Shown piece by piece: positions 14,650 through 52,179 of a DNA stretch of 64,000 nt. The stretch is from positions 62,001 through 126,000 of IMG/VR virus record IMGVR_UViG_3300020442_000005; one strand, given 5' to 3'. Made by a program: the position numbers and the translations under genes. The notes under the pieces were generated by a model. The model did not search any database, had not been told where the DNA came from, and worked only from the letters and a program-made list of their open reading frames with translations. Position 1 is the first letter of the stretch. Each line of letters opens with the position of its first letter.

Positions 14650-16464
14650 ATGCCAGAAAATAAAGATCGTAAATACTTAGCAAAAGATTTTGTCGGTTTA
14701 AGAAACGAACTGTTAAATCATGCAAAAATATATTTTCCAAATAATATACAGGATTTTTCCGAAGCATCTCTTGGCGGTTTACTTTTAGAAATGGCTGCAT
14801 ATGTCGGTGATAATATGTCATATTATCTAGATCATCAGTTCAATGAGCTAAATTATGAAACAGCAGTCGAGGCTGAAAATATAGAAAATCATCTTAGAAA
14901 TGCTGGCGTTAAAATAATCGGTGCTAGTCCGGCTACAATGGTCGTAAAATTCTACATTGAAGTACCATCAGAATTAATTAACGGAGACTACGGACCACAG
15001 CCAAAAAGTTTGCCAATAATCAAAAAAGGAACTACTGTTGCAACGGAGACAGGGATTAATTTTGAGCTTAGTCATGACATTGATTTTGCCGCCAAAGATG
15101 AATTTGGTGAATATGTTGCAACTATAGTATCTTCAAACAGACGCGGCGGTATCCCAGAATCATTTTTCATGTATTCTCCTGGGCTATGTACCTCTGGGCA
15201 AACAACAACAGAAACGTTTGCAATCCCAAACACAGATAAGCCTTTTCGTACAATTTCACTTCAGAATTCTTCAATTTCATCGATAGATAGAGTTTATGAT
15301 ACTGCCGGCAACGATTATTATGAAGTCGAAAGCTTGAGCCAAGATACTGTATTTAAAGCGGTAAATAACGATAACTTTGCCAACGACGGTGTTTTTTATA
15401 ACATGCAGGTTATATCTGCATCAAGACGTTTCATAACTGAAACTTCTTTACTTACAAGATCTACTAGTATAAAATTTGGATCTGGTTCTCCGTCATCGCT
15501 CGATACCGACATTATTCCAGATCCATCAGAATTAGCGTTACCTCTTTTTGGCCGGCGCAATGTTAAGAAATTTAGCATAGACCCAAACAGTATATTACAG
15601 TCAAAAACGCTTGGTGTTTATCCCAAGAATACAACAATCTTTGTTTCGTATAGATACGGAGGCGGATCGTCACATAACGTTCCAGCAAACAGTGCGAACG
15701 GAGTTTCCTCGCTGTCGATTGAATTTGATCCAAGCATCAGTGGAGCCGCAAGGACTCGGGTAATAAACAGCATCGACGTTGTTAACGACGAAGCCGCTTC
15801 TGGTGGTTCTGATTCTCCTGGAATCGAAGAGCTTAGGGCTTTAATTCCAGCATCGCGTAACATGCAAAACCGGATCGTTACAAAGCAAGATCTGTTGGCA
15901 CGTCTATTTACTTTACCAGCTGAGTTTGGTCGAATATTTAGAGCAAGTATTATTGCTAACCCGAACAACCCACTTGCTAGCATGCTACACGTAATATCAC
16001 GAAATAAAGAAGGAAAACTTACACAGGCTCCAGATGCCCTTAAGCAAAACATTTCTACTTACTTGAATGAGTTTAGACTGATTTCTAACGCAATCGATAT
16101 ACTGGATGCAGAAATAATTAATTTTAAGGTTACTGTTAACGTGGTAGTTACGGCCGGGACAAATCCCACAGATGTTGCTAATTCGATAATAATTAATTTA
16201 AAAGAACATTTCAATATAAACAATTTTCAACTTGGCCAAAATCTTAACGAAGCAAAAGTCATAAGTGTTATTTTAAACACTCCAGGAGTACAAGCTATGG
16301 ACAGCTTGTTATTCGGTAACATATCAGGAAACATAAATGATAGAAATTATTCTGGATACACTTATAGCTTTAGCAACAATAGAATTAATGGTAGTTACGC
16401 CATCCCAGCAAACGCTATTTTCGAGCTACGCTATCCTGAACAAGATATAACGGTGAACGTATAA
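14650..16464 (+). CDS. Baseplate wedge subunit, T4 gp6/gpJ-like
   Basis: YLAKDF..LRNELL, DFSEASLGGLLLEMAAYVGD..SYYLD, IKFGSG, SGGSD..GIEELR, QNRIVTKQD. Confidence 0.88.
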   Translation: MPENKDRKYLAKDFVGLRNELLNHAKIYFPNNIQDFSEASLGGLLLEMAAYVGDNMSYYLDHQFNELNYETAVEAENIENHLRNAGVKIIGASPATMVVKFYIEVPSELINGDYGPQPKSLPIIKKGTTVATETGINFELSHDIDFAAKDEFGEYVATIVSSNRRGGIPESFFMYSPGLCTSGQTTTETFAIPNTDKPFRTISLQNSSISSIDRVYDTAGNDYYEVESLSQDTVFKAVNNDNFANDGVFYNMQVISASRRFITETSLLTRSTSIKFGSGSPSSLDTDIIPDPSELALPLFGRRNVKKFSIDPNSILQSKTLGVYPKNTTIFVSYRYGGGSSHNVPANSANGVSSLSIEFDPSISGAARTRVINSIDVVNDEAASGGSDSPGIEELRALIPASRNMQNRIVTKQDLLARLFTLPAEFGRIFRASIIANPNNPLASMLHVISRNKEGKLTQAPDALKQNISTYLNEFRLISNAIDILDAEIINFKVTVNVVVTAGTNPTDVANSIIINLKEHFNINNFQLGQNLNEAKVISVILNTPGVQAMDSLLFGNISGNINDRNYSGYTYSFSNNRINGSYAIPANAIFELRYPEQDITVNV

Positions 16465-17993
16465 TGCATTTATTATTTACAGCTTCTGCAGACAATTATA
16501 TTACTAACAAAATCATTAGCACGACTTTGTCAGCCTCTGATGCAAACGTTGGTCAAGCTTCAACTCTAGATTTGTTTAAAATATACGATGAAACAACTTT
16601 TACTGGATTTACTGGATCATACAGTGCGCCAACAGAAATTTCAAGACTGCTGATAAAATTTGATCTAAACGAAATATCATCGTCTATCTCTTCCTATGCG
16701 GAGCTAGATGGCTTTAAAGCATATTTAAACCTAAAGGACATAAACGGATCGCAAATTGCACCAAACAAATTTAACGTCGCTGTATACCCTTTGTCAAATT
16801 CTTGGGATGAGGGACGAGGGTCTGATATATATGCATTTAATGATCTAGATCAATCAAATTGGGCCACCGCAAGTTATTCCAATGGTGGATACAACCTTTG
16901 GAACTCTCAGGGCGCCACATCACTGGGTTATCTAAACAGTGAAGACATCGATATAATAGGATCCGGGTCGATTGCTGGAACTGAAAAAGCCTTGTTCTCA
17001 ACTCAATATTTTGCCAACGGTCATGAGGATTTATTTGTCGATGTGACAACTGCTGTATCAGCAACCATGGCTGGTTTCATGAATGATTTCGGGTTTTTGG
17101 TTGCTTTTTCAGGCTCAGAAGAGACTGATTCGAAGACAAGATTTGTAAAAAGGTTTGCATCCCGACATGCTAGAAACGAATATTTAAGACCTTCGATGGT
17201 CATTAGATTTGAAGACAACATAAACGATCAAAGAAACAGTATGTTTTTCAACACCTCGGGATCTTTATTTGTCGAAAATAAGGTTCGTGGTGTCGGTGCT
17301 TACTTTATCTCCGGGTCTAACGAAGAACAACTCAGTGCCCCGGACAGTATGGTTGCAGTAATTCATAGTGCATCTTTCGCGATAACGGCATCGGCCGGAC
17401 CCTATAAGTCTGCTGGAAAAGTAAACCAGGGAGTATATTCAGCTTCGTTTGCAATTGATAGATTTAGCACTGCAAGCCTAGCGAGTAACGCATCTCTCTA
17501 TGAACACGTTGTTGCATCCGGCTCTTTGGTTATGTTCGAAAGATGGATGGACTCTGACGAAAGGGTCACGTATTATACCGGATCGTTCACGATCAAGTCG
17601 CCAGAAAGTTCTTCATCTGAATCACGTCCAAATTATGTCGTAACAATAAAAAATCTTGCAAACGCATACAAGAAAAACGAAGTGCATAGACTAGACTTAC
17701 ATGTACGTGATAGCAACAAGATATATAAACCAGTAAGAAGATCACTTGGATTAATCTCATTGCGTTTTGATGAGGCTTATTATCAAATCAGGGACACAAG
17801 AACAAACGATATAATTGTGCCGTTTACTAAGTCAAACAACGCAACTAGAATATCATCAGACGCCACCGGAATGTATTTCAATTTATCTACAAAAAACTGG
17901 CCCAAGGGTCGAAGCTACACAATTGATGTAATGGTCGTAGAAAATCAAAAAGACCGAATATATGAGACAGGCCAAACTTTCAAGGTAGTGTAA
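16464..17993 (+). CDS. Putative baseplate structural protein
   Basis: Sits within the wedge operon. Beta-rich, with SRLLIKFDL and WDEGRG motifs and many [ST][GA]S tripeptides. Confidence 0.6.
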   Translation: MHLLFTASADNYITNKIISTTLSASDANVGQASTLDLFKIYDETTFTGFTGSYSAPTEISRLLIKFDLNEISSSISSYAELDGFKAYLNLKDINGSQIAPNKFNVAVYPLSNSWDEGRGSDIYAFNDLDQSNWATASYSNGGYNLWNSQGATSLGYLNSEDIDIIGSGSIAGTEKALFSTQYFANGHEDLFVDVTTAVSATMAGFMNDFGFLVAFSGSEETDSKTRFVKRFASRHARNEYLRPSMVIRFEDNINDQRNSMFFNTSGSLFVENKVRGVGAYFISGSNEEQLSAPDSMVAVIHSASFAITASAGPYKSAGKVNQGVYSASFAIDRFSTASLASNASLYEHVVASGSLVMFERWMDSDERVTYYTGSFTIKSPESSSSESRPNYVVTIKNLANAYKKNEVHRLDLHVRDSNKIYKPVRRSLGLISLRFDEAYYQIRDTRTNDIIVPFTKSNNATRISSDATGMYFNLSTKNWPKGRSYTIDVMVVENQKDRIYETGQTFKVV

Positions 17994-17994
17994 C

Positions 17995-20900
17995 ATGAGT
18001 AATGAATCTTTATTTTCATCAAACAACATTATTTTCAATGTTAAACCTAGTACGATTGTCAACAAATCTTTGACAAAAGACGACCTGCAAGATTATAATG
18101 ATGATACAAATAAAAGCTGGAGCACGCTGCCTCTTTCGAATGGGTTATACAGTACCCAGCAGTTAAATGTTGACTGGACCGATTTCTCTCAGCACACCTT
18201 TTTTCATTCCGCGGAAGTTAAGGTTAATGCTGCATATGAAAGAATAATTAACCAATATCCTTATGATGGCAGTCAAGAAGAAAAACAGGTATTCTTTGAT
18301 AATCTAAATGGCTTTGAGTCATACGTGTATGACATTTTTCCGAAATACAGAGGCTATTTAAATTTCAACAAAAGCATTAAAATAGTTACAAAAGATTCTC
18401 AGGGTTATCTTTACCCAACATTGGCACGAAAAAAATCTTTACAAAGCGTCGTTGGTAGTGGAGTAGAAAAAAGCGGATATACTTTGGAATTTTTTATAGC
18501 GCCACCAGACGATGCTACCAATCATGGTCGACAAACATTGTTTCAGAAAATTTCTGATGACCATACAACAGGTATCAGCGTCTTTATTTCTTCTTCGTTG
18601 TCGACTGATTCAAGCGTTATGCTACATTCAATATTTTCATCCGGCTCTGGAGATGCAACAGCCGAAAGAGAAACGTATGTCTTGCACGTATCGGCTTCGA
18701 TTCCAAAAGGTGAATTTAGTCATATTGGTATCGTGTATGACAAGTCAGATACTAACGGAATGTTCATCACGCGAAACGGCGTTGTCGAAGACACCGAGTC
18801 AAGTACGCTGAATTTTGACAAAATCGATTTCTTAAGAAACGATATTACAATAGGAACCGGCTCTAGTCACGTGGGGTCGATAGTATCGAGTGCTGTCCCG
18901 GCAAACGGATATACTTTCGAATCAGACGAACAATTGACTGGCTCTTTGGATGAAATAAGATTTTGGACTTATGCCAAAACAGCAACTGATATATCTTCAA
19001 GTATCAATACAAACGCAACTAAAACAGATGGATTAGCGTTATATTATAAGTTTAATGAACCCACCGGATCATATGCAAATTCCGCACTAGTACTAGATTC
19101 GTCCGGTAACGGTCTGCATGCGAATATAACAAACTACATAGCAAAATCTCGAATTGTAGAAACTGCTTTGCCAATAAAGTATGAGGCCTCAAAAGATAAC
19201 CCGGTGCTGTTCCCGGATTATCCAACACTAACTAGTGAAAACATTAGACTGTTAAATTCTGCAAGTAACTACGATATAATCAACCCAAATTACATTATTA
19301 AGCTTATTCCATCACACTATTTAGACAATGATTTGATTCAGCCTGTTAACCCGACGTTATTACCGGCATACACTTCGTCTATTGCAGTGCCTGGTGGCGG
19401 TAAAATGCCTTCAAATCAGGTCATTGCACATTTCTTATATTTGTGGGCAACGTTTTTTGACGACGTCAAACTATACATTGATTCGTTTTCGGACATTAAT
19501 GCGCTTAACTATTTAGATAACAATGGTATACCACAGCAAGCATTAGAGATGGTTGCCAAGCAGTATGGATATAGTTTGCCAAACATATTTTCAACAGCTA
19601 GTCCAGATCAGTACAACTCTGGAAGACGTCTAAACGACGATATTAAAAATTCAGAAAGGTCACTTAAGAGTATACTTGCTTCAATATGGCGCAGAGTCAC
19701 GGCTGAGCTACCTCATATTTCTCGGGCGAAAGGTACATTAGCGTCAATCCGGATGATGCTAAATTCTTTTGGTATCGATGCCGATTCAAACTTTAGAATT
19801 AGAGAATATGGTACTCACCCTGGATTTCCAAAAGCGTTAAGCGTACGAAAATCTAAATCAAAAAACACACTGGCAATTAATTTCAACACGTCGTCAATGT
19901 ATATGCACAGTAGCAATCTACAAGCTCATCGCTGGGAACCTGGTGCACCGGCTGCGCATTTTGACTTACCGGTCTTTGATCCGCTCAATGAAAAATGGAC
20001 GACAAATACCAAATTAATTAATTTAACGTCTGGATCTTGGACTTTTGAATCACATTACTCTCTTCCGGAAAACAGCACTTATGCAACACAGTCATTGGCT
20101 CGGCTTGATATGTCAGCTTCAGATGGTACTGTTAGCCCATTTGTGAACTGCCTTGTATATTCCGGAACTCATCATGCTCCTGAAGACTACAAGGTTCGAT
20201 TGGTTGTGGCAGCTAGCGGTTCTGCGGCCGACAGTGATATTGACTTGACGATTCCGAACGTAAACATGTTCGATGGCAACAGATGGTATGTGAACTTTTC
20301 TCGAGAAAATTTTGGAAGCAGATCGAAAATGCATCTACGAGTCTTAAGTGCAAACGGCTCTAGGGTATACTCCAATTATGCCACCTCTAGCTTCTTTGCG
20401 AACAGCACAAACCATCCTTTTGATGGTTATATAGAAACTACAATGCCGACAAGTGCCCCTATAACAGACCGACCAACTGACGACATTCCATTTATAAGCA
20501 TTGGTAAAACTAGTTATAGTTCGAAGCATTTAAATAACTCGACAAATGCAAATCTGGGATATAGCAATACGCATTTTTCTGGATCAGTTTACAATATTCG
20601 TTTCTGGTCGAAGCATTTAGACGCAAAAGAAACATCTGATCATGCGTTGAATCCATTTTCTTTTGGATCAGATAACCCGATAATAAACTCCCAGTTTGTA
20701 CATCCAGAGTACAAAGGCCTAGGTGTTACCGCGTCTTATGACGGTACTAGCTATTTTGCTCCAACTATTTACAATTCTTCTTCAAAAATGATACATGTTA
20801 ATAGTGGATCCTGGCAGAGATTGCGACTGTTAGTTGAAAATTTAGACACTTCTGCAACCGGAAGTGATGCTTCTGGTAAAATGACTATTCATGATACGTC

Positions 20901-21540
20901 CCAAAACGCCTATAACTTTTTCATCCGGGACGCAGCACCTTCTGCCGATTTATTGACTTTCAAGTCAATTGACTATAGCACCTTCGACCCAAATTGGGAT
21001 AGTGCCTCGGTAAGCAATAAAGTTCGCGTAAGATCATTTCTAGATGAAGATCTAGCAGAAGCTTCAGGTGTTACTCATGGATCTCAATCAACATTAGACC
21101 CTGCAGAGCGTGTACCAGACGATAAGAGATTTAGTATTGAAGCCAGTATATCTCAGGCACTTAACAATGATGTTGCAAATAAAATATCCGATATATTCTT
21201 TATAAGCAATGCAATCGGCGCGCCGGAAATGCAGTATTCTCTGCGTTATCCGGATTTAGATAGATTAGCGGATAAATATTTTAATCGGCTTGAGGATAAG
21301 GTTGACTTTAAAAATTATTTTGATTTTTTCAAATGGTTTGACACAAATTTTTCTGGTATGATCGAGCAAATGATACCAACGACTACTGAGTTCTTGGGTG
21401 TTAATTTCGTTATTGAATCTCATATGTTAGAAAGAAATAAAATAGAATACAAACAGGCAGATGTGCACATTGATCTAAGTCGACGACTCGCAGCCAAAAT
21501 TCAGACTATTTCAGCAACAAATGTTCAAAGTCAAAACTGA
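17995..21540 (+). CDS. Baseplate wedge protein (gp7/gpI-like) with two LamG/concanavalin-like domains
   Basis: LPHISRAKGTLASIRMMLNSFGI resembles the gpI/gp7 KGT motif. LamG signatures YTLEFFI...SHIGIVYD...GSLDEIRFW and FSGSVYNIRFW. Confidence 0.65.
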   Translation: MSNESLFSSNNIIFNVKPSTIVNKSLTKDDLQDYNDDTNKSWSTLPLSNGLYSTQQLNVDWTDFSQHTFFHSAEVKVNAAYERIINQYPYDGSQEEKQVFFDNLNGFESYVYDIFPKYRGYLNFNKSIKIVTKDSQGYLYPTLARKKSLQSVVGSGVEKSGYTLEFFIAPPDDATNHGRQTLFQKISDDHTTGISVFISSSLSTDSSVMLHSIFSSGSGDATAERETYVLHVSASIPKGEFSHIGIVYDKSDTNGMFITRNGVVEDTESSTLNFDKIDFLRNDITIGTGSSHVGSIVSSAVPANGYTFESDEQLTGSLDEIRFWTYAKTATDISSSINTNATKTDGLALYYKFNEPTGSYANSALVLDSSGNGLHANITNYIAKSRIVETALPIKYEASKDNPVLFPDYPTLTSENIRLLNSASNYDIINPNYIIKLIPSHYLDNDLIQPVNPTLLPAYTSSIAVPGGGKMPSNQVIAHFLYLWATFFDDVKLYIDSFSDINALNYLDNNGIPQQALEMVAKQYGYSLPNIFSTASPDQYNSGRRLNDDIKNSERSLKSILASIWRRVTAELPHISRAKGTLASIRMMLNSFGIDADSNFRIREYGTHPGFPKALSVRKSKSKNTLAINFNTSSMYMHSSNLQAHRWEPGAPAAHFDLPVFDPLNEKWTTNTKLINLTSGSWTFESHYSLPENSTYATQSLARLDMSASDGTVSPFVNCLVYSGTHHAPEDYKVRLVVAASGSAADSDIDLTIPNVNMFDGNRWYVNFSRENFGSRSKMHLRVLSANGSRVYSNYATSSFFANSTNHPFDGYIETTMPTSAPITDRPTDDIPFISIGKTSYSSKHLNNSTNANLGYSNTHFSGSVYNIRFWSKHLDAKETSDHALNPFSFGSDNPIINSQFVHPEYKGLGVTASYDGTSYFAPTIYNSSSKMIHVNSGSWQRLRLLVENLDTSATGSDASGKMTIHDTSQNAYNFFIRDAAPSADLLTFKSIDYSTFDPNWDSASVSNKVRVRSFLDEDLAEASGVTHGSQSTLDPAERVPDDKRFSIEASISQALNNDVANKISDIFFISNAIGAPEMQYSLRYPDLDRLADKYFNRLEDKVDFKNYFDFFKWFDTNFSGMIEQMIPTTTEFLGVNFVIESHMLERNKIEYKQADVHIDLSRRLAAKIQTISATNVQSQN

Positions 21541-21550: not shown

Positions 21551-22744
21551 ATGGCAGGTAATACATTTTACACAAGAAACGCTAGCAAAGCCTCAAAAGC
21601 ATCAAACTCTCATCGCTCCCAGGCGGATAGAAATAATTTGCCCGGGCTGTCGTATACTCAGGGACACTCAATAAGAGATATATTTGTGCCTCGAGGACTT
21701 ATGCCAGTCATAGGTCGTAATGGCTACAAAACAATATATAACGAGCGTATTAATGATGGTACGGCTAGCAATAGAACCATTTACAACACTCAAGATCCTC
21801 GTAGCAACAATTATTTTGTCGACTCGGACGCGGTTTATAAATCCTCTTTTTATATTTCTAGAAACGAAATTGTCGATATTACAGTAGAGAATTATGAAGA
21901 TTATATCGTTGGAATTATCTTTCCAAGCGGCGACGTTGATTTATTATCAAGTTTAGATGGCAACGTAATATCAGATCTGGTCACCCATCTAGTCACAAAT
22001 GATAAAAATTTTTATGAAAAAATATCAGTCCCGGAAAGTCTAAGATTTTACACCGGTTTTCGTGGCTACGGTAATTTTTATTTTAAATTTATCTCTGGCG
22101 GCAATGAATCAACCGTTGTTTTTCCGAACGGTGGGATAACACAGGTACCAAACTTTGGTATTCTTACAGAGGTTTATGGCGATAATGGAGACTTTCAAAA
22201 GAGTACTCCTTATACAGATCTAAGAAAATTTAATGCAATAGAGTGGGTACAGGAATCTGGTCCACCTGGAATGTATCCAGATGTTACGCCTAGCCCATCG
22301 TATACTGGTGTTTTATTTAACGGAATCATCGAACCGTTTAAAATAAGAACAGAGATTTATGATCTAGACACGTTTGCAAAAACGGATGAAAAGAAACCAA
22401 ACAGCGTCAGCGGGATATTGATGAATAACATCACACATACTTCAGTTCTTAGCGAAACCCTAAATGCGGGATCATCGCACTATGAAGATATTGGTAATTC
22501 AAATACCGGTACCGCATTATTGGAACCGCAATATATAACTCCAGAAAGCTTCCATCAGGATCCTTTTCTAGAAAAAGACCCGTTCGGCAATAAATATCTA
22601 GATGAAGAGATGCTAGACATATTTTCCGGAGCGTTTTTGGACACAGGCCTAGTTTCTGATGGAATCATATCGCAAGCCACTGGTTTTATTACGGAAAACT
22701 ATGGTAGAAGCAGTTCAATTAATTATAGAGGGCGATTAAGGTAA
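21551..22744 (+). CDS. Hypothetical virion protein
   Basis: 397-aa ORF with SD, inside the structural operon. Confidence 0.55.
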   Translation: MAGNTFYTRNASKASKASNSHRSQADRNNLPGLSYTQGHSIRDIFVPRGLMPVIGRNGYKTIYNERINDGTASNRTIYNTQDPRSNNYFVDSDAVYKSSFYISRNEIVDITVENYEDYIVGIIFPSGDVDLLSSLDGNVISDLVTHLVTNDKNFYEKISVPESLRFYTGFRGYGNFYFKFISGGNESTVVFPNGGITQVPNFGILTEVYGDNGDFQKSTPYTDLRKFNAIEWVQESGPPGMYPDVTPSPSYTGVLFNGIIEPFKIRTEIYDLDTFAKTDEKKPNSVSGILMNNITHTSVLSETLNAGSSHYEDIGNSNTGTALLEPQYITPESFHQDPFLEKDPFGNKYLDEEMLDIFSGAFLDTGLVSDGIISQATGFITENYGRSSSINYRGRLR

Positions 22745-32212: not shown

Positions 32213-32213
32213 A

Positions 32214-33941: not shown

Positions 33942-34078
33942 CGATCGTTTTAGCAAATTAAAACTATTAAAAATATTGATATATTACGGTAGTTCAGTAT
34001 GAATAAGAACTATTTTAATTATTGAAAATTTATCGCTTTTAATAATGTAGACTTGGTGGGTTAAATATTTTTGATGGC

Positions 34079-34086
34079 ATAATTAT
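34079..34086 (+). promoter_or_regulatory. Candidate late promoter ATAATTAT (overlaps TATAAT)
   Basis: Motif copy at the end of a long AT-rich intergenic region. Confidence 0.5.
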
Positions 34087-34113
34087 AATCGTGGATACCA
34101 AATGGAGTTAAGA

Positions 34114-34332
34114 ATGAAGTATCAAACATCCGATTTATCAATCGCTGCATTTTTGATGATGAAAGGCCTAAAGCTTGTTTCTGCAGACCGAGAATCATCT
34201 GGGCGGTTCATGTTCGTGTTTGATGATCCAAATAACGAAGGCGTAAAATACGCTATAGAATTTGCAGGGTCAGACTGTGCAGTTTATGATAACCACGTGC
34301 GGAATCTTAAAAAAATATTGTACAGAAATTAA
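34114..34332 (+). CDS. Small protein, DUF5659-like
   Basis: YQTSDLSIAAFLMMKG.KL...FMFVF pattern. ATG at 34114 after GGAG (track start 34102). Confidence 0.6.
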   Translation: MKYQTSDLSIAAFLMMKGLKLVSADRESSGRFMFVFDDPNNEGVKYAIEFAGSDCAVYDNHVRNLKKILYRN

Positions 34333-34365
34333 ACAGTTATTTTAGATTTAAATCTTGTTAGAGTC

Positions 34366-34373
34366 ATACTTAT
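34366..34373 (+). promoter_or_regulatory. Candidate late promoter ATACTTAT
   Basis: Variant motif about 100 nt upstream of the 34476 gene. Confidence 0.35.
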
Positions 34374-34475
34374 AGTAAAGAAATTTAGGTAAGTAGCGTT
34401 CGTTAAGTTCAGATATATTCTCTTATTGTTGTAGAAGAGTAAAAAACAAACAATTGTATAAATGGAGAAATACAA

Positions 34476-43200: not shown

Positions 43201-45614
43201 TTATGAGTAAATCGTATCCTTACAATAACTTTGATAGCAGTGTAGGTTTATACAGTCACATGCTCATGATGATAAACAGCTTTTGTGCCGAGGTAGAAAA
43301 AAACATCGCTTATGATATTGCGGTTAGTGCAAACGAATATGGAATTACAAAAAGAACTCCAGGTGAATATTCAGACGCAACCGCGGTCGGCGTACTTGGA
43401 ACTATTTTTAATAATACAAACATAGGACTTATTTATGGCCGATCAACTGATGCTCAATTCTTAGACGACAACGATGCAGAATCCTTGTTTCTTGCCGGGC
43501 ACAAATCTTCTAAAGGAGACGATCCGGAAGGCCAAGCTTTAACGCATGTTTATATGCGCGCGCTAATAATGGAGATTACAGGTCAGGCATGCAAGGCTTT
43601 CAAAAACAATATTCGCATTGGAACTAAAAGGCTAGTTGGGTTATCTCCGCAACCAAACGACTCTGCAACAACGAATGATACATATGTAACTGTTAACACA
43701 AGCATTGACAGAATTATGCTTGAGGCAGAGGTTGCAAAACTTTTCCTGCCTATAGTTGACAATGTAGATCCAAAAAAAGGTCCGGTGCGGTGGCAAATAA
43801 ATTACGGTGACTGGAGCTCAGCTGGTATCGAGCTTGAGAATCAAACGTTTGTTGAAAGATTTGTTATTTCACGTGGGGTTGAAAAAACTCTTGCAGGTGA
43901 ATTCAGCATGGACGTCGAAGTAGAAGGTGTCGTAGTGCCAGCCGGTGACGTTAACGCCTTTTTAGAATCTACCGAACAAACGGGAGGATACACGTTTAAC
44001 ACCTTCGAAGCCAGACAAAATTTTATTGCGGAAACACAAGCCCAGGTACAAAGCCTAGAAGCCTCAGTAAGAGCATATTTTGGATTTTTGCTTGACAAGG
44101 ATGAAATTGTTCCCTATAATTTTATCGATAACACTGAGTTACCTATTAGCTCTTTTGCTTCCTCTCCTCAACGTGGCGCTTTGTCGACAACAATAAAGGC
44201 ATGTATATTTCACCGGGAAGATACACGAAGGCTAATGGAATACCTAAAGTCAGTATCTAGACACTATAGTCAAGCTCAAGCAAACATGGAAGGATTAGTC
44301 AAAGATCCAAACGGCGCTGAACTTTTTGATGCCGCCACATTACCGGGTATAGAAGCTAACGAAATTATAAAATACTCATCTTTAAGACAAACGTTTTTAA
44401 GATCGTTTTTAGCATCTGAAGAATCAGGCATACGATCTAATGCATATGCTCCGTCCTCAAATTTTGGGCCAGTATCCAGAAACATGGCGTCCGACGATAC
44501 ATCACTCGTCTTAAATATTAGTAGTTTAATAAATAACATGCTTCTCGATGCATCGCTTATATCTACAACAGACGAAGATTTGCAAGTGTTTTTAGGGACC
44601 GGTGCAAATAATACCAACTATGGTTCTGAAAATGCAAATTTGACAAATCGAACGCGAGATGCACATAGTTTAAAATTTGGTAGAATAATCGCAGTAGGTA
44701 TACCGGCAGGATATATTGATGCAAATAAATCGACGACGTCGCTTGATATACTAAATAGACTAGTGTGGCTCGAGCAAGAGTTCGAACCTTTAAACGGCAA
44801 ATCTTTAAATTCGCTTTGGCGTTGTTATTGGCCAGCATTATTTATTAATCGAGCCGAACTTATACAAAGGCTTTCCAAAGAAACAAATTGGCAAAGCTTA
44901 AAAGATAGTTTAGTATATGGTACAATCGACAAGGATACTGGTCTGTATGTTGTAAAAGATTATCAAACAATTTCTGAATATATTAACGAAAATATTTTAA
45001 ACTCACCAAAAATGAATATACCTACAGACGAAAATGATAATGTAATAACTAGTATGCCAACAGCTGATCATATAATTTTCAACCACGTGTTGGATGCTTT
45101 ACTTAAACTCTATTTAGATTTTTATGCTGGATTAAATTTTGCTGAATCTTCTTTTTCTGTAAATCTACAATCAAATATTTTGTACGTTGATCAAAAATGT
45201 ATTGACAACATCGATTTACTACTTAGAGAGTGTGGAATAGAATCTCAAGAAAATATATTAGATGAGAATAAAATACGTTCATTTAAGGATTTTTACTATA
45301 GGCAAACAATTGATTCGGACAGTGAAGTCGCATATGACAAATATGCGAAGTTTGTGTCAATTACTCAGTCCAGATTGTTCTCGGCCGATCAAATGACGAC
45401 GATGGCTTTAGTACCAAACATATTTGATAGAACCTTTTGTTTTTGGAGCCATATGTCTCAGGTATCAGAAAACATTGCAACCGAGACAAATAACATTGAA
45501 TTGTCCTTCTACGATATATCTGATGACGGTACCGTTGATGAGACTGGTAATTCTCAAAACTCAATGCATAATGACTTTAATTCTCAGGTTACTTTCAGGA
45601 GTTATTCATCATGA
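40212..45614 (+). CDS. Very large hypothetical protein (1800 aa), probably virion-associated
   Basis: Uninterrupted ORF with a low-complexity N-terminus and an acidic, mixed helical body. No motif recognised. Confidence 0.6.
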   Translation: MNVFGNNNAGPNGQFGNQASGGPPRPSTLAPTNPAISLGVAVNSANAESTPTSDVGDNDPTGWLGWINALDHAENNLGLSDVNARTGNAWAQQFPDNPKGFQDKYYFFAVSNPSFTVAYISDSANAATPQFSLNNTSIMQIVYRADSSITNIQTGESSTDTGSNSNNDATEASEGNTTTPETLSSESREPNGSVRDRTSREIYREDFNEIDPTRLVSITSEGLNNFVSSDNVRFDLNSSNVFADSLEANDASSSLITDSYSPIEKEGISVNRPKILAASDYDLIGDQESKSVLASSLNYSIGQHRALTNFYNNILFPEINLLTDLEDAYELKKNRLLKSIEFIKEIDQYKASFINTVTDFDSYGLQTLGFTPGLNATVAIRQAFYDLSAYIEIGGYFLANSLNGVYETPTGLSSNEGYSPRIIDNDFDGSYRMQTSTSWIHSATGILHDNFGLYQKQFANRDSYGDYKIYSNISGFNSQRFMSDPNFRSTKFYDAIEQDWTDLLDYTAEQFRDSPSAMAAHFAQGLYVNMFKSYVVNTNSLANAPDLGEEYFSEETLLLQILGDAIDVKNDVKSLTELDNTKKLAQLLRYNQDGKTIYPFERPNANFSGDTSDSVSGIEQWFDANIGNIIEGRETDFRGLDNFSKLFNDIINKTENKLNSVVLRGHGQIIFNEIVRVLKKVYDGTLDDLKHHQPGLSNISAACKYVFSDYSPAAPSYRVEDVLESVNFEVMEAIDEGLVIVNESREVEKVNNIILKDTVQNGLQTVQETMAYGQSVQEDFNYYVQSYVDGPGGYMAGEPQNGEEFVDTDSFFEGLYTGMDVEGFSHGFGYGAQDAGVDLASQFNAIGEPAYTSAGGGSHLTNPANSGNGLMGQQLTTPVQVNSMRPNMYGMMNTDAGGGEYAFVGQFYGDDGQQLPYNEIAEQGLIDAEMSAGILARKEEVFRKLLFFIEMFASVVDESQDIFWNLAYNSVQAQLELHPSAPGHGTDHRRYHQYNQIMSKSYPYNNFDSSVGLYSHMLMMINSFCAEVEKNIAYDIAVSANEYGITKRTPGEYSDATAVGVLGTIFNNTNIGLIYGRSTDAQFLDDNDAESLFLAGHKSSKGDDPEGQALTHVYMRALIMEITGQACKAFKNNIRIGTKRLVGLSPQPNDSATTNDTYVTVNTSIDRIMLEAEVAKLFLPIVDNVDPKKGPVRWQINYGDWSSAGIELENQTFVERFVISRGVEKTLAGEFSMDVEVEGVVVPAGDVNAFLESTEQTGGYTFNTFEARQNFIAETQAQVQSLEASVRAYFGFLLDKDEIVPYNFIDNTELPISSFASSPQRGALSTTIKACIFHREDTRRLMEYLKSVSRHYSQAQANMEGLVKDPNGAELFDAATLPGIEANEIIKYSSLRQTFLRSFLASEESGIRSNAYAPSSNFGPVSRNMASDDTSLVLNISSLINNMLLDASLISTTDEDLQVFLGTGANNTNYGSENANLTNRTRDAHSLKFGRIIAVGIPAGYIDANKSTTSLDILNRLVWLEQEFEPLNGKSLNSLWRCYWPALFINRAELIQRLSKETNWQSLKDSLVYGTIDKDTGLYVVKDYQTISEYINENILNSPKMNIPTDENDNVITSMPTADHIIFNHVLDALLKLYLDFYAGLNFAESSFSVNLQSNILYVDQKCIDNIDLLLRECGIESQENILDENKIRSFKDFYYRQTIDSDSEVAYDKYAKFVSITQSRLFSADQMTTMALVPNIFDRTFCFWSHMSQVSENIATETNNIELSFYDISDDGTVDETGNSQNSMHNDFNSQVTFRSYSS

Positions 45615-48100: not shown

Positions 48101-48112
48101 TAAGGAGTACCA

Positions 48113-49510
48113 ATGGCTCAGTTCAAATCATTCACGCCGGCTGACTTTTCTCAACCTGCATCATCACTAAATCAGCTTATCGACGTGATTCAAGAAGACA
48201 TATCTGGATCTGCAACTCGACGTAAATACCAAGTATATGTAACTGGTGGTATAGGACCTGGTGTAACTAGTTCACTGTATCAAACCACGTACGATCAGGA
48301 CTTTTCGTTGCAGACGTCAAACGAACTGTTCGATATGTCTGTTGGGTTGTTTCATAATTCCGCAGTTACAAACATTGTGTCTGAGGCTCCGGGTTATCGG
48401 GTTGACACAAATGGCAAGCTTTTGTTTGCATCTCAGTCAATGATGATGAGAGAAAAAGTCGATACGTACAGACAGTTTGCTTCTTACTTATTGGGTAATG
48501 CTGATCATGCATTTTATTTAGGTTCGAACACGTTCCCAAGAAACAACGGCACTGTGTCTACCGCAACTGACAGAATCGATGCGGCGCTTTTCATTAATGT
48601 TAAACGTCTGTTTGCTCGTGATAAACTAAGAAAAGAAACGTTTGCAATGCGCTACTACACCAGTGCTTCAATGATCGGTTCTTTTCAAGAAACAGCAGAA
48701 TTTGATCCATCAGTAGGTGAACAAGCCAATATTTTCGACACAAATTTAGTAGCATCAGGCTCTAGAAACATCGGTGGTGGTGGAATCGCAGAAACTTCCG
48801 CGTTTGGTGTTGAGATTTTTTCTGATATTGGTGCAAATGCAGATAATCGAACTACGGTTGCGGGATCTGTGGCAAGAATTAAAATGGCCTCAGACACAAC
48901 TCGCGATGTTGGACTACTTTTTTACGACACTGGTATTGCTGTCTTAGATATGGCAAAGGCAAACTGGGGATCTCAACCGGTCTATGGTTTGATTGATGCG
49001 ATGAACAACACATCATACAGCCATACTTCGGATAAGTTGCAAGGCAACAATTCAACGGCGATGACGTCATTAGGAACAATTCAGCGAGGTACCGTTGTTA
49101 TTGGTGATACATCAGGTGGCGGTAATTCTAACGCCAAGTTTATACCTGATTTTCTTGTGTCTGGAAGTATTGACAACATTATAGATCACGTTGCTACTAC
49201 GAGATTTTCTTCTGGTACCCTTACTGCCATGGCGTTTCAAAACTCTACGCAGATTCAGTCGACTATCTATTTCTGTCGTGCCGCACCTGGCGAGTTTAAC
49301 TACAGCTCAAATCCGACCTATATAGATTCCTCTAACCAATTGAACGTCATCGAAAATACTGCTGATGCAACAGAGCGATCGTTTACATTTATTACAACCG
49401 TTGGGTTGTATGGTCCAAACATGGATTTATTGGCCGTAGGAAAGCTTTCAAGACCGGTTGAAAAGAATGATGAAAAGGATCTTACGATACGAGTTCGCCT
49501 AGACTTTTAA
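48113..49510 (+). CDS. Putative baseplate/tail structural protein
   Basis: C-terminal YFCRA..GEFNYSSNPTY...FITTVGLY...LLAVGKLSRPVEK...IRVRLDF. Confidence 0.6.
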   Translation: MAQFKSFTPADFSQPASSLNQLIDVIQEDISGSATRRKYQVYVTGGIGPGVTSSLYQTTYDQDFSLQTSNELFDMSVGLFHNSAVTNIVSEAPGYRVDTNGKLLFASQSMMMREKVDTYRQFASYLLGNADHAFYLGSNTFPRNNGTVSTATDRIDAALFINVKRLFARDKLRKETFAMRYYTSASMIGSFQETAEFDPSVGEQANIFDTNLVASGSRNIGGGGIAETSAFGVEIFSDIGANADNRTTVAGSVARIKMASDTTRDVGLLFYDTGIAVLDMAKANWGSQPVYGLIDAMNNTSYSHTSDKLQGNNSTAMTSLGTIQRGTVVIGDTSGGGNSNAKFIPDFLVSGSIDNIIDHVATTRFSSGTLTAMAFQNSTQIQSTIYFCRAAPGEFNYSSNPTYIDSSNQLNVIENTADATERSFTFITTVGLYGPNMDLLAVGKLSRPVEKNDEKDLTIRVRLDF

Positions 49511-49524
49511 TAGGAGGACTACAG

Positions 49525-52179
49525 ATGTCATTTGTAAAGCTAAACCAAAATAACTTTGCGATGACGTCTGTTGTTCTAAATGCCGATCGTACATTTGTTT
49601 CATCGTCACTTGGGATAACAGGCGCATTAAAAGTTATTGTGGATCGGTCTGAAACCCAGAAAGATAGTGTTGACGATCGGGTAGGCCTGACGGGTGATAA
49701 TACGCCACAGCCTTTTGGGGAAAATACCTACGAAGGCAGGCGTATTATGATTATGGAAGCTGCGGCATTAGGATCTGGTAACGCAGAATTTGAAATAGCA
49801 ACGTTGCTTGATGGTACCGGTGCGGTTGCTGGTCATGAGCCACCAGAATACGAGAAGTATGGAATAGAGGCTTCTACGACAACGTCTGAAACTGGGTATA
49901 GTGATATATCAATGCATCCCAGGAACAGCACAGAACTTCTTGTGAGGGCCCTAAAACCTACAAATTCAATCTTCTCTTCTGGATCGATGGCTTTGTCTTT
50001 ATCTGAACGGATTTTAGAACCTTATTACAAGGTACAGAACAGTGCTATAGGTTCAAAATTTGTTAATTTTAATTGCATGAGCTTTTTCGAACCCAGTGGT
50101 TTAAAACCGGCTTTGATATATCGCGCACAGACTGAATTAAATAATAACAACGTTCTGGAATACATTTATCAATCCCGAAGCGGAGATTTTTCAATTGAAT
50201 TTTACATAAAACTAAGAGATACTCTCAAAACCGGGACTGTCATACATTATCCAGGTCATTTTAGTGTTTCGGTTTTAACTGGATCTGAGAAAAACGCAAG
50301 CGGATTTGCAACAAATTACTCTCTTGGTTTAGCTATCGGTAGCGCTGTAACCCTGAGTTCGGCTGATACTCCGTATAATTTAACTTTTGGAACAACTTCC
50401 CAAACTCAGAAATCGCAATCAACTATAGTAAAAGATTATTGGCACCACTGTGCAATAACCTATAAACGATCTACTGGTGATACTTCGATATATATCGACG
50501 GAAAACTTAGCTCACGATCCAAGCATGCTCGTGGGATTGCAACTACCGATACGTATAATGGACTGATAATTGGATCTTATTATAACGGATCAACTTCAGA
50601 CTTGCCCAAGCTTACTAGTGATCAGATTCAAGGACACGGCTCCTTACAACAACGCGCTGAGGATGTAGCTTCTAGTAATTTTGACTGCCATTTAAATGCC
50701 GATATCCATGAAGTTCGAATCTGGAACAAAGTCATTAACGAGAAACAAATTGCGCAATACATGAATACAACCTATACAGGCTCATATGCTGACCATCGCA
50801 ATAGAGGTTTGATGCTTTATGTACCGGGATTGTTTGATGTTGACTACAGATACTTACATACTCATGTTGTTAATCCACGTGACAGCAAATTTGCGGCTGA
50901 AAATAAAAATCAACCATCCGGATTTACATTTTCTTATGGAAACAATTCGACACCAGATTTTGGTACAGTTGCATACACAGGATCGCTAGCGGCAAATATA
51001 AGTGATTTAAGTGAATTATTTGATGGAGCCACGCCAGGCGTTACTAAGAAGCTGATCGCTGCCCCGTATAACACGAACCACGCAAACATAGGAAATTTTG
51101 CTAACGTAAATATACAAGGTTTTTTAAAAGATTTTGCAAATATTAACTTTCCTCACTGTCATCATTTATCTGAGTCTCTCGGAGATTTTTATTCAGATGC
51201 TGAAGTGTTGAATGTGTACGAGTCTTTTTATAATACAAATGCAGATTTGACAAGTTCGTTTAACCAAACTTTGGGACATCAAGCCCGAAACTGTTTTATT
51301 TTGCCGTGTGACAATGGCAATTTTAGACCTGATTACAATACACTGTTTCATTCGACTGGCAGCAATTTCCTTTCTAATGATGGGTTTTATATAAACACAA
51401 AGAACATTGGAGACCTTGATGATCTGCTAGATTCCAGATTGTTTTTTATTGATGATGTTTTCGCGCAGCGAGGAACTTTTAATTCTCCAGAATCTTTCGA
51501 GAATACGCAAGGCGGTGATTCTAGATATAATTCTGGAATTGATTTATTTGTTATAGACGATGATCAACTTAACCAAGATATTATGAATTTTGATCAACCA
51601 ACGTCTGCCGGTGCAATGTCAGAATTTTTTGACACATCGGATTTTCCAGGACAGCTTACGACTGTTGTTACCATTCCTCAGCTCTATTATGGAAGAAGAA
51701 TAAAGCCTGGCAGTCTAAAGTTATCAAGTCATCTTTACAATGGTAACCAGGCTCAAATCGAATTACGTGATAATGGTTACGGAGTTTTATATAGGCACCA
51801 AGCATCTGGTTCAATAGCCAATTGGAATAAAGTGGGCGACGTCTTTTATGGCGAAGGTTTAATTTACATAAGGCATCCTTCCTTATACGGATTCTCGGAT
51901 AGTGATATGACATTAGAGTTTCAATCTGAAAGTCAAGTCAATGTTTTTGAAGCAAGCATCCCATGTGTATCAGCACAATTTAACAGTTCATCAAATCCAA
52001 ATTATAATAAGTTACGACCTTCATTGAATGATAATGAATCCGCCGAAGACTTTGTATACATATCGACGGTATATTTACACGACAACAACCTTAATGTTGT
52101 TGGTAAAGCAAAGCTGGCTCAGCCAGTTATTAAAAGGCCGGACAACAAATACTTATTTCGCGTAAAACTGGATTATTAA
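49525..52179 (+). CDS. Structural protein with a LamG domain; C-terminus paralogous to 48113-49510
   Basis: FSIEFYIK...WHHCAITY...IYIDGK...IHEVRIWN. Ends FNSSSNPNY...YISTVYLHD...AKLAQPVIKR...FRVKLDY. Confidence 0.65.
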   Translation: MSFVKLNQNNFAMTSVVLNADRTFVSSSLGITGALKVIVDRSETQKDSVDDRVGLTGDNTPQPFGENTYEGRRIMIMEAAALGSGNAEFEIATLLDGTGAVAGHEPPEYEKYGIEASTTTSETGYSDISMHPRNSTELLVRALKPTNSIFSSGSMALSLSERILEPYYKVQNSAIGSKFVNFNCMSFFEPSGLKPALIYRAQTELNNNNVLEYIYQSRSGDFSIEFYIKLRDTLKTGTVIHYPGHFSVSVLTGSEKNASGFATNYSLGLAIGSAVTLSSADTPYNLTFGTTSQTQKSQSTIVKDYWHHCAITYKRSTGDTSIYIDGKLSSRSKHARGIATTDTYNGLIIGSYYNGSTSDLPKLTSDQIQGHGSLQQRAEDVASSNFDCHLNADIHEVRIWNKVINEKQIAQYMNTTYTGSYADHRNRGLMLYVPGLFDVDYRYLHTHVVNPRDSKFAAENKNQPSGFTFSYGNNSTPDFGTVAYTGSLAANISDLSELFDGATPGVTKKLIAAPYNTNHANIGNFANVNIQGFLKDFANINFPHCHHLSESLGDFYSDAEVLNVYESFYNTNADLTSSFNQTLGHQARNCFILPCDNGNFRPDYNTLFHSTGSNFLSNDGFYINTKNIGDLDDLLDSRLFFIDDVFAQRGTFNSPESFENTQGGDSRYNSGIDLFVIDDDQLNQDIMNFDQPTSAGAMSEFFDTSDFPGQLTTVVTIPQLYYGRRIKPGSLKLSSHLYNGNQAQIELRDNGYGVLYRHQASGSIANWNKVGDVFYGEGLIYIRHPSLYGFSDSDMTLEFQSESQVNVFEASIPCVSAQFNSSSNPNYNKLRPSLNDNESAEDFVYISTVYLHDNNLNVVGKAKLAQPVIKRPDNKYLFRVKLDY

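What the first reader, a model, noticed from the sequence alone, without database searches (positions are those of the whole stretch)
16464..52179. [S/T]-[G/A]-S tripeptide saturates external virion proteins: candidate sequon for phage-encoded virion glycosylation
Seen: the 509-aa protein at 16464 has about 14 TGS/SGS/SAS/TAS tripeptides by manual count, against roughly 2 expected from a rough composition estimate. They often follow a hydrophobic residue (FTGS, ISGS, YSAS, ITAS). The same pattern recurs through the 17995, 22744, 26672, 32214, 48113 and 49525 proteins. I found essentially none in terminase, primase or Mre11-Rad50, and few in 37765 or 40212. The same genome segment encodes GDP-fucose and amino-sugar synthesis plus two glycosyltransferases. 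Inference: the tripeptide is a recognition site for O-glycosylation (or another modification) of surface-exposed baseplate/fibre proteins, making a writer-plus-sequon system.
Basis: partly seen in the sequence, partly recalled or inferred. Interest (0 to 1): 0.88.

Follow-up and report, generated by a model that had tools for sequence, protein, structure and literature searches.

The report
Serine tripeptide enriched in phage baseplate proteins
A short serine motif ([S/T]-[G/A]-S) is packed far beyond chance into a few tail proteins of one group of marine giant phages that always carry two sugar-transferring enzymes, so it may mark sugar attachment sites, but no attachment has been shown.

Summary
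The enrichment is real but narrower than claimed. It is strong in two non-homologous baseplate proteins: 16464 has 14 sites against 1.9 expected, and 17995 has 15 against 3.4. In a blind scan of 46,656 degenerate tripeptides, [ST][GA]S ranks first in both. The motif is specific: [ST][GA]T, [ST]-other-S and permuted orders sit at expectation. It acts at protein level, because the codons are diverse. In 22744, 26672, 32214 and 48113 the excess is only 1.4-2.5 fold, matching the 1.5-1.7 fold background in control phages S-PM2 and HTVC008M; 49525 is borderline.

About half the sites are positionally conserved in homologues. The rest turn over while density stays 4-7 fold. Predicted structural contexts are mixed.

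The phage is a 273-kb Far-T4-type jumbo phage. A nuclease-GT4-GT4 cassette is conserved in all relatives found. Flavobacterium phage immuto, Microcystis phage Mel-JY01 and Rhodothermus phage RM378 also show the enrichment. T4 does not. LR756508, which has only one GT4, shows it weakly.

The sequon hypothesis passes every in-silico refutation test I could run. It remains unproven, and the co-occurrence is phylogenetically confounded. A clade-specific structural signature is the main rival.

The parts
16464..17993 (+). 509-aa baseplate protein directly after the gp6 homologue. It has an N-terminal CBM96-like jelly roll and two Ig-like domains. It carries 14 [ST][GA]S sites, all within residues 1-375.
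   Evidence: Enrichment. AF2 model with pLDDT 77 and fold hits. Across 119 homologues, 9 core sites are kept in at least 70%.
17995..21540 (+). 1181-aa baseplate protein with LamG/ConA-like lectin domains and 15 [ST][GA]S sites. Not homologous to 16464.
   Evidence: enrichment, Laminin_G_3. (no homology to 16464). (family mean 14.4 sites against 3.2 expected, only 5 core positions). (model and fold).
49525..52179 (+). 884-aa Laminin_G_3 protein with borderline enrichment (6 against 2.2; its top pattern is T-G-[AS]).
26672..33941 (+). Two fibre-like proteins (1846 and 575 aa). Their excess is at background level. Several sites belong to a repeated ~50-aa module, [ST]GSLxxLxxGxxY ... [ST][GA]S[DN]G.
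22744..26643 (+). No significant enrichment (6 against 4.3).
48113..49510 (+). Not significant (4 against 1.6). It shares a C-terminal domain with 49525.
37765..45614 (+). Two large proteins (816 and 1800 aa) in the structural block with no enrichment (0 and 1 sites). They serve as internal negative controls.
14112..16464 (+). gp25-like and gp6-like baseplate wedge proteins. They anchor the module and are not enriched.
8031..9332 (+). GT4a: a family-4 (GT-B) glycosyltransferase with an invariant EX7E motif. It belongs to a virus-restricted family and is 58-84% identical across the marine family. The listed ORF overlaps 7223-8092 by 62 nt, so the true start is probably downstream.
9274..10494 (+). 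GT4b: a second family-4 glycosyltransferase with a conserved EX7E motif. It also matches the GT4-conflict Pfam family.
7223..8092 (+). PD-(D/E)XK nuclease, always found directly upstream of GT4a in this family.
454..7174 (+). Nucleotide-sugar cluster, in gene order: a 220-aa DegT/LegC-type aminotransferase ORF; a KedN5-family B12 radical-SAM C-methyltransferase; a GDP-L-fucose-synthase-like reductase; a GalE-like epimerase; an NDP-sugar dehydrogenase; and GDP-mannose 4,6-dehydratase.

Best explanation
The feature is hydrophobic-[S/T]-[G/A]-S-hydrophobic. It is a short protein-level motif under selection in peripheral domains of a few tail proteins of Far-T4-type phages: the two proteins after gp6, one of two sheath paralogues and a neck adaptor. 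I think it most likely serves as the acceptor or recognition site for a phage-encoded post-translational modification. The best candidate writers are the two conserved, catalytically intact GT4 glycosyltransferases encoded just upstream of the baseplate genes. They would transfer a sugar made by the adjacent, variable GDP-6-deoxyhexose/amino-sugar pathway onto a serine hydroxyl in the host cytoplasm, during or after folding.

Shown: the enrichment, its sequence specificity, conservation combined with site turnover, mixed structural contexts, and clade-level co-occurrence with the GT pair.

Inferred: that any modification occurs, that it is a sugar, which residue carries it, and that GT4a/GT4b act on protein.
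For: 1. [ST][GA]S is the top pattern of 46,656 in two non-homologous proteins.
2. It is strictly specific. In 16464, [ST][GA]S is 7.4 fold, [ST][GA]T is 1.0 fold, [ST][non-G/A]S is 1.0 fold, and permuted orders are 0.5 fold. Codons are diverse.
3. Density is maintained while sites turn over. The 17995 family averages 14.4 sites against 3.2 expected, with only 5 core positions and 94 distinct columns. At 25-45% identity only about half the sites are shared. The 16464 family has 9 core sites plus 3.3 variable sites per sequence, against 1.6 expected in total.
4. There is no single structural context.
5. Sites lie in peripheral parts: residues 1-375 of 16464, and 9 of 10 sheath sites in the non-core N-terminal 713 aa.
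6. The same bias occurs in tail proteins of Mel-JY01 (13 against 2.3; [ST]GS is the top pattern), immuto and RM378. All three carry GT4a plus a GT4b-like gene.
7. It is weak in LR756508, which lacks GT4b. It is absent from T4 (4 against ~14) and at background in S-PM2 and HTVC008M.
8. The GT pair sits in a fixed position before the baseplate genes in every IMG/VR locus with enough flank. Both enzymes keep EX7E. GT4a is a virus-restricted family.
9. DNA is an unlikely target. Immuto DNA shows canonical dA, dC and dT plus fdPreQ1 by LC-MS (PMC10516641).
Against: - There is no chemical evidence of glycosylation in this or any related phage, and none was found in the literature searches.
- Half the sites are fixed in position, with Gly the most conserved residue, as expected for structural residues.
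- Many sites sit in or beside beta-strands between hydrophobic residues. That is unlike the disordered Ser/Thr-rich acceptors of known cytoplasmic bacterial and phage O-glycosylation (my own knowledge of the GtfA/B and mycobacteriophage systems).
- The co-occurrence with GTs is effectively one phylogenetic event.
- In RM378 the cassette lies among replication genes. In immuto and Mel-JY01 it lies 30-80 kb from the baseplate genes.
- Fibres, major capsid protein, sheath 2, 37765 and 40212 are not enriched.
- GT4b matches a Pfam family from 'conflict systems', and the genome has a divergent thymidylate-synthase-family gene. A nucleic-acid or other target for the GTs in this phage is therefore not excluded.
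Confidence: 0.4

Rival explanations
1. Clade-specific structural signature. The motif is a folding or packing element of the beta-sandwich domains (CBM-like, Ig-like, LamG) used by these phages. A small residue faces the core between two hydrophobic residues, Ser/Thr lie on the outer face, and Gly-Ser forms tight turns. It would be inherited and spread by domain shuffling. The GTs would be unrelated to it.
For: The flanks follow beta-strand alternation: hydrophobic at -1, +3 and +5, and G/A at +1. Nine of 14 sites in 16464 are kept in at least 70% of 119 homologues, with Gly 90-100% conserved. Sites 6 and 302 are two-residue hairpin turns in the model. Two sites in 17995 fall in the usual LamG 'xGS(L/V)(D/Y)(E/N)IRFW' strand. 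In the fibres the sites belong to a repeated module. Both lead proteins are lectin-type jelly rolls.
Against: Structural turn or strand preferences are universal. Yet T4, S-PM2 and HTVC008M tail proteins lack the bias. Contexts are mixed, including loops and a helix. About half the sites are not positionally shared at 25-45% identity while density is maintained. A strict preference for Ser over Thr at position 3, with [ST]x[S] at expectation for other x, does not follow from beta-propensity. No homology is detectable between the enriched proteins.
Confidence: 0.35
2. The motif is recognised by some other trans-acting factor: a different modification (phosphorylation, acylation, methylation) or an assembly chaperone or partner protein specific to this clade. 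The GT4 pair would build a glycan on another acceptor, such as host envelope lipid or polysaccharide, or a small molecule.
For: The same evidence for sequence-level, clade-specific selection applies. The closest named relatives of the GT4 enzymes act on small molecules, lipids or polysaccharides (BshA, MshA, EpsE, WbaZ). The cassette is not linked to structural genes in RM378, immuto or Mel-JY01.
Against: No candidate alternative writer was identified. GT4a is virus-restricted and far more conserved (58-84%) than expected for a gene tracking variable host surfaces.
Confidence: 0.13
3. The GT4 pair glycosylates phage DNA (hypermodified bases), with the adjacent nuclease degrading unmodified DNA. 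The tripeptide bias would be unrelated.
For: The nuclease-GT-GT arrangement is conserved. In RM378 it lies beside ribonucleotide reductase, Erf and helicase genes. GT4b matches the 'GT4-conflict' Pfam family. The genome has a divergent thymidylate-synthase-family gene that could be a hydroxymethylase.
Against: Immuto carries the orthologous cassette, yet its digested DNA shows only canonical dA, dC and dT plus fdPreQ1 (PMC10516641). No Tet/JBP domain was found, although that search had no positive control. This rival says nothing about why the motif exists.
Confidence: 0.08
4. Chance or composition artefact arising from serine-rich proteins and a pattern chosen after the fact.
For: The pattern was chosen after looking at the data. 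For 22744, 26672, 32214 and 48113 the excess is not distinguishable from the background in other phages.
Against: Look-elsewhere-corrected tests still single out this exact pattern in two independent proteins. The bias is replicated in hundreds of homologues and in three distant cultured phages.
Confidence: 0.03

Closest known systems
Mycobacteriophage virion O-glycosylation (phage-encoded glycosyltransferases modifying capsid and tail-tube proteins; cited in PMC11256854 and PMC12363180; details from my own knowledge of Freeman et al. 2023)
   Same: Phage-encoded GTs close to structural genes. The proposed target is the virion's own proteins, modified in the cytoplasm.
   Different: In that system the acceptors are Ser/Thr-rich C-terminal extensions of the major capsid and tail-tube subunits, with no defined tripeptide. 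Here the candidate sites are isolated tripeptides inside folded domains of baseplate and sheath proteins. The enzymes are a GT4 pair, and nothing has been shown chemically.
Chlorovirus and giant-virus capsid glycosylation using virus-encoded GDP-mannose dehydratase, GDP-fucose synthase and glycosyltransferases
   Same: The virus encodes its own gmd, an fcl-like reductase and GTs. GT4b weakly matches the PBCV-1 GT B736L structure (E 4e-4).
   Different: Those glycans are N-linked to Asn in a eukaryotic virus's capsid protein. Here the proposal is O-linkage to Ser in tail proteins of a bacteriophage.
Serine-rich-repeat adhesin glycosylation by GtfA-GtfB (streptococci and staphylococci)
   Same: Two adjacent GT4-like proteins, and Ser-Ala-Ser-type acceptor sequences.
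   Different: GtfB is non-catalytic, and the substrates are long disordered tandem repeats. Here both enzymes keep EX7E, similarity to Gtf1 is not significant (E 0.07-0.3), and the sites are isolated.
Autotransporter heptosylation (AAH/TibC on AIDA-I/TibA)
   Same: Cytoplasmic O-glycosylation of many serines in a beta-rich, repetitive surface protein. Recognition is described as a short strand-loop-strand element rather than a strict sequon (my own knowledge).
   Different: A different enzyme family and sugar, and a bacterial adhesin rather than a virion protein.
Far-T4 phages (RM378 group; PMC4360716)
   Same: T4-type portal, terminase, gp6 and gp25. The nearest cultured relatives by gp6 and GT4a are immuto, Mel-JY01 and RM378.
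   Different: A 273-kb jumbo genome with no nucleotide-level match to any deposited phage.

Membership tests
CAZy GT4 / Pfam Glycos_transf_1 retaining glycosyltransferases (GT4a 8031, GT4b 9274) | Pfam PF00534 match above the gathering score | tested here: met
   40.6 and 54.8 bits against a cut-off of 26.4.
CAZy GT4 / Pfam Glycos_transf_1 retaining glycosyltransferases (GT4a 8031, GT4b 9274) | Conserved EX7E motif in the C-terminal domain | tested here: met
   E304/E312 in GT4a are 100% conserved. E293/E301 in GT4b are 95-97% conserved across 35-37 orthologues, including distant ones.
Phage virion O-glycosylation (mycobacteriophage type) | Phage-encoded glycosyltransferases in or beside the structural module | tested here: met
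   GT4a and GT4b lie 4-6 kb upstream of gp25/gp6 in the window and in all IMG/VR loci with enough flank. This does not hold in RM378, immuto or Mel-JY01.
Phage virion O-glycosylation (mycobacteriophage type) | Glycan chemically detected on virion proteins | not testable with these tools
   Needs glycoprotein staining or mass spectrometry of virions.
Phage virion O-glycosylation (mycobacteriophage type) | Acceptor residues in an exposed, disordered Ser/Thr-rich terminal extension | tested here: not met
   Sites are isolated tripeptides within predicted folded domains.
GtfA-GtfB serine-rich-repeat glycosylation system | One catalytic GT4 plus a non-catalytic paralogue | tested here: not met
   Both proteins retain EX7E in the marine family. 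Only the RM378 second protein looks degenerate.
GtfA-GtfB serine-rich-repeat glycosylation system | Significant sequence similarity to GtfA/Gtf1 | tested here: not met
   Best E values are 0.07 and 0.31 for GT4b. Gtf1 is not among the 53 matches listed for GT4a at E up to 1.
GtfA-GtfB serine-rich-repeat glycosylation system | Substrate with long tandem Ser-X repeats | tested here: not met
   Sites are typically separated by 6-145 residues, with no tandem array.
Virus-encoded GDP-fucose pathway (gmd plus fcl) | GDP-mannose 4,6-dehydratase equivalog | tested here: met
   TIGR01472 at 454.5 bits against a cut-off of 415.
Virus-encoded GDP-fucose pathway (gmd plus fcl) | GDP-L-fucose synthase equivalog | tested here: inconclusive
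   NF047922 is the best hit for 3140-4063, but at 223.9 bits against a cut-off of 500. The product sugar is therefore uncertain.
Two-residue beta-hairpin turn motif (structural Gly-Ser turn) | Motif positions 2-3 form a two-residue turn between adjacent strands | tested here: inconclusive
   True for sites 6 and 302 of 16464 only. The other sites are at strand starts or ends, mid-strand, in loops or in a helix. I had DSSP strings only, no coordinates.
Far-T4-type myoviruses | T4-type portal, large terminase, gp6 and gp25, with RM378-group phages as nearest cultured relatives | tested here: met
   Portal_T4 at 9e-78, Terminase_6N, gp25 and gp6. Relatives by gp6 and GT4a are immuto, Mel-JY01, LR756508 and RM378.

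The most novel reading that the evidence does not exclude
Far-T4-type phages use a defined linear O-glycosylation sequon, hydrophobic-[S/T]-[G/A]-S. It would be written by a virus-restricted pair of GT4 enzymes that are core genes of the clade. The result would be a coat of variable 6-deoxy or amino sugars on lectin-like baseplate domains and the sheath surface. This would be the first sequon-directed protein glycosylation system described for tailed phages of Gram-negative or cyanobacterial hosts.
Probability: 0.3. Interest if true: 0.85.

Novelty: new variant of a known kind. Interest (0 to 1): 0.66.

Why it matters
Phage-encoded glycosylation of virions has been shown in very few systems, and none has a recognisable sequon. 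If this motif marks modification sites, several things follow.
- Glycosylated phage proteins could be predicted from sequence alone.
- It would explain why an abundant marine and freshwater phage clade keeps two GT4 genes as core genes next to fast-changing sugar-synthesis genes.
- It would bear on receptor binding, virion stability and evasion of host or grazer recognition.

The question is directly testable, because three relatives are in culture: Flavobacterium phage immuto, Microcystis phage Mel-JY01 and Rhodothermus phage RM378. Even if the structural reading is right, a clade-specific tripeptide at 4-7 fold excess across non-homologous proteins is an unusual sequence signature.

Tried and rejected
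- DNA-level motif: rejected. The 29 sites use diverse codons.
- Generic beta-strand Ser/Thr alternation: rejected. [ST]x[S] with x other than G/A is at expectation, and [ST][GA]T is not enriched.
- Local compositional patches: rejected by block shuffles.
- Post-hoc pattern choice: addressed with a 46,656-pattern scan.
- Paralogy between enriched proteins: none by BLAST or hhalign, except the fibre module and a C-terminal domain shared by 48113 and 49525.
- PHROGs and Pfam on the structural proteins: mostly no hits.
- Nucleotide search against deposited phages: no match.
- T4 late-promoter word TATAAATA: 4 matches against 6 expected, so uninformative.
- Sigma-70 promoter and terminator scan of 1-18000: at chance level, so uninformative about co-transcription.
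- Tet/JBP search of the genome: negative, but without a positive control.
- Literature searches for glycosylated virions in this clade: nothing found.
- Solvent accessibility could not be computed, because model coordinates are not exposed to the script box.
None was found. LR756508, lacking GT4b, is the nearest case.

Full report
**What the window is.** The window is bases 62001-126000 of a single 273,025-bp virus contig with 40% G+C. It encodes a T4-type portal, large terminase, gp25 and gp6. It has no nucleotide-level match in deposited phage genomes. By protein similarity of gp6 and GT4a, the nearest cultured relatives are Flavobacterium phage vB_FspM_immuto, Microcystis phage Mel-JY01 and Rhodothermus phage RM378, plus the uncultured 484-kb record LR756508. 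This is the 'Far-T4' neighbourhood described in PMC4360716. Homologues of the 509-aa protein number about 800 clusters, almost all from marine metagenomes.

**Checking the observation.** I translated 41 plus-strand ORFs and compared [ST][GA]S counts with 2000 composition-preserving shuffles each.

| ORF start | Observed | Expected | Note |
|---|---|---|---|
| 16464 | 14 | 1.9 | z 8.8 |
| 17995 | 15 | 3.4 | z 6.2 |
| 26672 | 20 | 11.4 | p 0.012 |
| 49525 | 6 | 2.2 | p 0.02 |
| 32214 | 6 | 2.7 | p 0.054 |
| 48113 | 4 | 1.6 | p 0.07 |
| 22744 | 6 | 4.3 | p 0.27 |
| 37765 | 0 | 1.25 | not enriched |
| 40212 | 1 | 3.7 | not enriched |
| terminase, primase, Mre11-Rad50 | 0 | - | not enriched |

Shuffling inside 30-residue blocks leaves z at 8.4 and 6.7 for the two lead proteins.

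The pattern was chosen after looking, so I scanned all 46,656 tripeptide patterns built from 20 residues and 16 residue groups. [ST][GA]S is the single best pattern in both 16464 (p 1.8e-8; no shuffle of 300 reaches it) and 17995 (p 3.3e-6; 7 of 300 reach it). The two proteins show no detectable homology.

The motif is sharply defined in 16464:
- [ST][GA]S is 7.4 fold over expectation.
- [ST][GA]T is 1.0 fold.
- [ST][non-G/A]S is 1.0 fold.
- Permuted orders are 0.5 fold.
- A hydrophobic residue is strongly preferred on each side.

The 29 sites use many different codons, so selection acts on the protein.

In 26672, [ST]GT is as enriched as [ST]GS. Several fibre sites come from a repeated ~50-residue module shared by 26672 and 32214. 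Structural proteins of the control phages S-PM2 and HTVC008M show the same general 1.5-1.7 fold excess, with no protein ranking the pattern highly.

Outside the window, the first of two sheath paralogues (10 against 2.8) and a gp13-like adaptor (4 against 0.65) are also enriched. Nine of the ten sheath sites lie in the non-core N-terminal 713 residues.

**What the motif-rich proteins are.**
- 16464 follows the gp6 homologue. Its AlphaFold2 model (30-sequence alignment, pLDDT 77) is a CBM96-like jelly roll followed by two Ig-like domains. All sites lie in residues 1-375. The C-terminal domain is the part conserved with Mel-JY01, and it has none.
- 17995 has LamG/ConA-like lectin domains.

**Evolutionary behaviour of the sites.**
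- In 119 homologues of 16464 (about 40-96% identity), nine positions keep the motif in at least 70% of sequences, and Gly is nearly invariant. There are also 3.3 variable sites per sequence, against 1.6 expected for the whole protein, spread over 48 alignment columns.
- In 32 homologues of 17995, the mean is 14.4 sites (range 9-23) against 3.2 expected. Only five positions are core, and 94 columns carry a site in some sequence.
- At 25-45% identity only about half the sites of one sequence have a counterpart within three columns in the other, while density is unchanged.
- Position 1 switches freely between Ser and Thr. Position 3 is almost always Ser.

**Structural context.** Only DSSP strings were available, not coordinates.
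- In 16464 the sites sit at two-residue hairpin turns (6, 302), strand ends (216, 283), strand starts (265, 352), mid-strand (135, 308, 326, 372) and low-confidence loops.
- In 17995 they sit at strand ends (216, 707), at strand starts (315, 862) or just before one (679), mid-strand (233), in loops (288, 357, 741, 955), in a helix (422), before a helix (534) and in low-confidence regions.

No single structural role covers them. Where a site lies in a strand, the hydrophobic residues at -1, +3 and +5 imply that G/A faces the core and the two hydroxyl residues face outward. That orientation is an inference.

**The candidate writers.** The genes upstream of the baseplate module are as follows:
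- GDP-mannose 4,6-dehydratase, which passes the NCBIfam equivalog cut-off.
- An Fcl-like reductase, below the cut-off.
- A GalE-like epimerase.
- An NDP-sugar dehydrogenase.
- A KedN5-family B12 radical-SAM C-methyltransferase.
- A short DegT-type ORF.
- A PD-(D/E)XK nuclease.
- Two GT4 glycosyltransferases.

In every one of 40-plus IMG/VR loci with enough upstream sequence, the order is nuclease, GT4a, GT4b, three small genes, a ~530-aa protein, gp25, gp6, the 509-aa protein, then the LamG protein. GT4a is 58-84% identical while the 509-aa protein is only 39-79%. Both GTs keep the EX7E motif across all orthologues. GT4a belongs to protein clusters that are almost entirely viral. Similarity to any solved GT is weak and generic, and similarity to the streptococcal Gtf1 is not significant.

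**Co-occurrence across phages.**

| Phage | GT genes | Motif enrichment in tail proteins |
|---|---|---|
| immuto | nuclease-GT4a-GT4b, 30 kb from baseplate genes | 5/0.8, 8/2.3, 5/1.1, 7/2.2 |
| Mel-JY01 | nuclease-GT4a-GT4b, 80 kb from baseplate genes | 13/2.3 ([ST]GS is top pattern), 7/1.3, 7/1.2, 4/0.6 |
| RM378 | FEN-like exonuclease, GT4a, degenerate GT4b-like protein, beside replication genes | 6/0.65, 5/0.84, 4/0.47, 4/0.68, with [ST][GA]T at expectation |
| LR756508 | GT4a-like only; GT4b not found, though the same search finds it in immuto and Mel-JY01 | 0/0.3 in the 509-aa homologue, 4/1.3 in the LamG homologue |
| T4 (22 proteins of the 50-kb structural region) | no GT search run on T4 | 4 against about 14 expected in total |
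| S-PM2, HTVC008M | no GT4a/GT4b in the 80-100 kb examined | background only |

The pattern of presence and absence fits a writer-plus-site system. It amounts to one clade against outgroups, plus one partial case, so descent alone could explain it.

**Rival target for the GTs.** A nuclease-GT-GT cassette suggests DNA glycosylation, and the genome has a divergent thymidylate-synthase-family gene. However, immuto carries the orthologous cassette, and published LC-UV-MS/MS of its DNA found canonical dA, dC and dT plus fdPreQ1 replacing dG (PMC10516641). This argues against DNA as the conserved target. It does not exclude it for this phage.

**Verdict.** The tripeptide bias is real, specific, protein-level, clade-wide and maintained by selection in a handful of peripheral tail-protein domains. 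It does not 'saturate external virion proteins'.

Four features are hard to explain by a universal structural preference and point to a trans-acting recogniser:
- site turnover at constant density;
- strict Ser at position 3;
- mixed structural contexts;
- absence from outgroup phages.

The conserved, virus-specific, catalytically intact GT4 pair is the best candidate for that recogniser. I give this reading 0.4.

The main rival, at 0.35, is a clade-specific structural signature of these beta-sandwich domains. It is supported by the fixed core positions, the conserved glycine and the strand-register flanks.

No chemical evidence exists either way. The test is straightforward, because three relatives are in culture.

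Noticed in passing
window 55138-58284: A single 1048-aa ORF combines an Mre11-like metallophosphoesterase N-terminus with a Rad50/SMC-like C-terminus, so it appears to be a fused Mre11-Rad50.
   Followed up: no
G000:C1:138675-145741 (outside the window; L096:12675-19741): Two tandem tail-sheath paralogues of 1115 and 1232 aa, each with a ~700-aa non-core N-terminal part. Only the first is rich in [ST][GA]S.
   Followed up: partly
window 7223-10494 and L083-L095: A nuclease-GT4a-GT4b cassette is shared by the marine jumbo family, immuto, Mel-JY01 and RM378. In RM378 the nuclease is a FEN-like exonuclease and the second GT is degenerate. GT4a is more conserved than the structural proteins.
   Followed up: yes
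window 454-1116: The DegT/LegC-type aminotransferase ORF is only 220 aa and matches only about positions 24-100 of a 360-position profile. It may be a truncated or split gene.
   Followed up: no
window 1116-3128: A KedN5-family cobalamin-dependent radical-SAM C-methyltransferase (E 1e-66) sits in the sugar cluster, which suggests a C-methylated sugar.
   Followed up: no
window 26672-33941: Fibre proteins 26672 and 32214 share a repeated ~50-residue module with two motif instances each: F[ST]GSLxxLxxGxxY, then about 23 residues later [ST][GA]S[DN]G[SQ]xTI.
   Followed up: partly
window 33942-34475: A 535-bp stretch without an ORF of 100 aa or more. It is the largest gap in the otherwise tightly packed structural block.
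   Followed up: no
G000:C1:187646-188164 (L099): A divergent thymidylate-synthase-family ORF (44 bits). It could be a dNMP hydroxymethylase and so a sign of modified DNA.
   Followed up: no
window 8031-8092: The listed GT4a ORF overlaps the nuclease gene by 62 nt and is 26 aa longer than its orthologue in L001. The real start codon is probably further downstream.
   Followed up: no
L102/L103 (RM378 17847-20267 and 85689-88748): Two RM378 proteins have a different strong bias, [ST]-hydrophobic-S (32 against 9.8 and 21 against 6.3). This is distinct from the [ST][GA]S bias.
   Followed up: no
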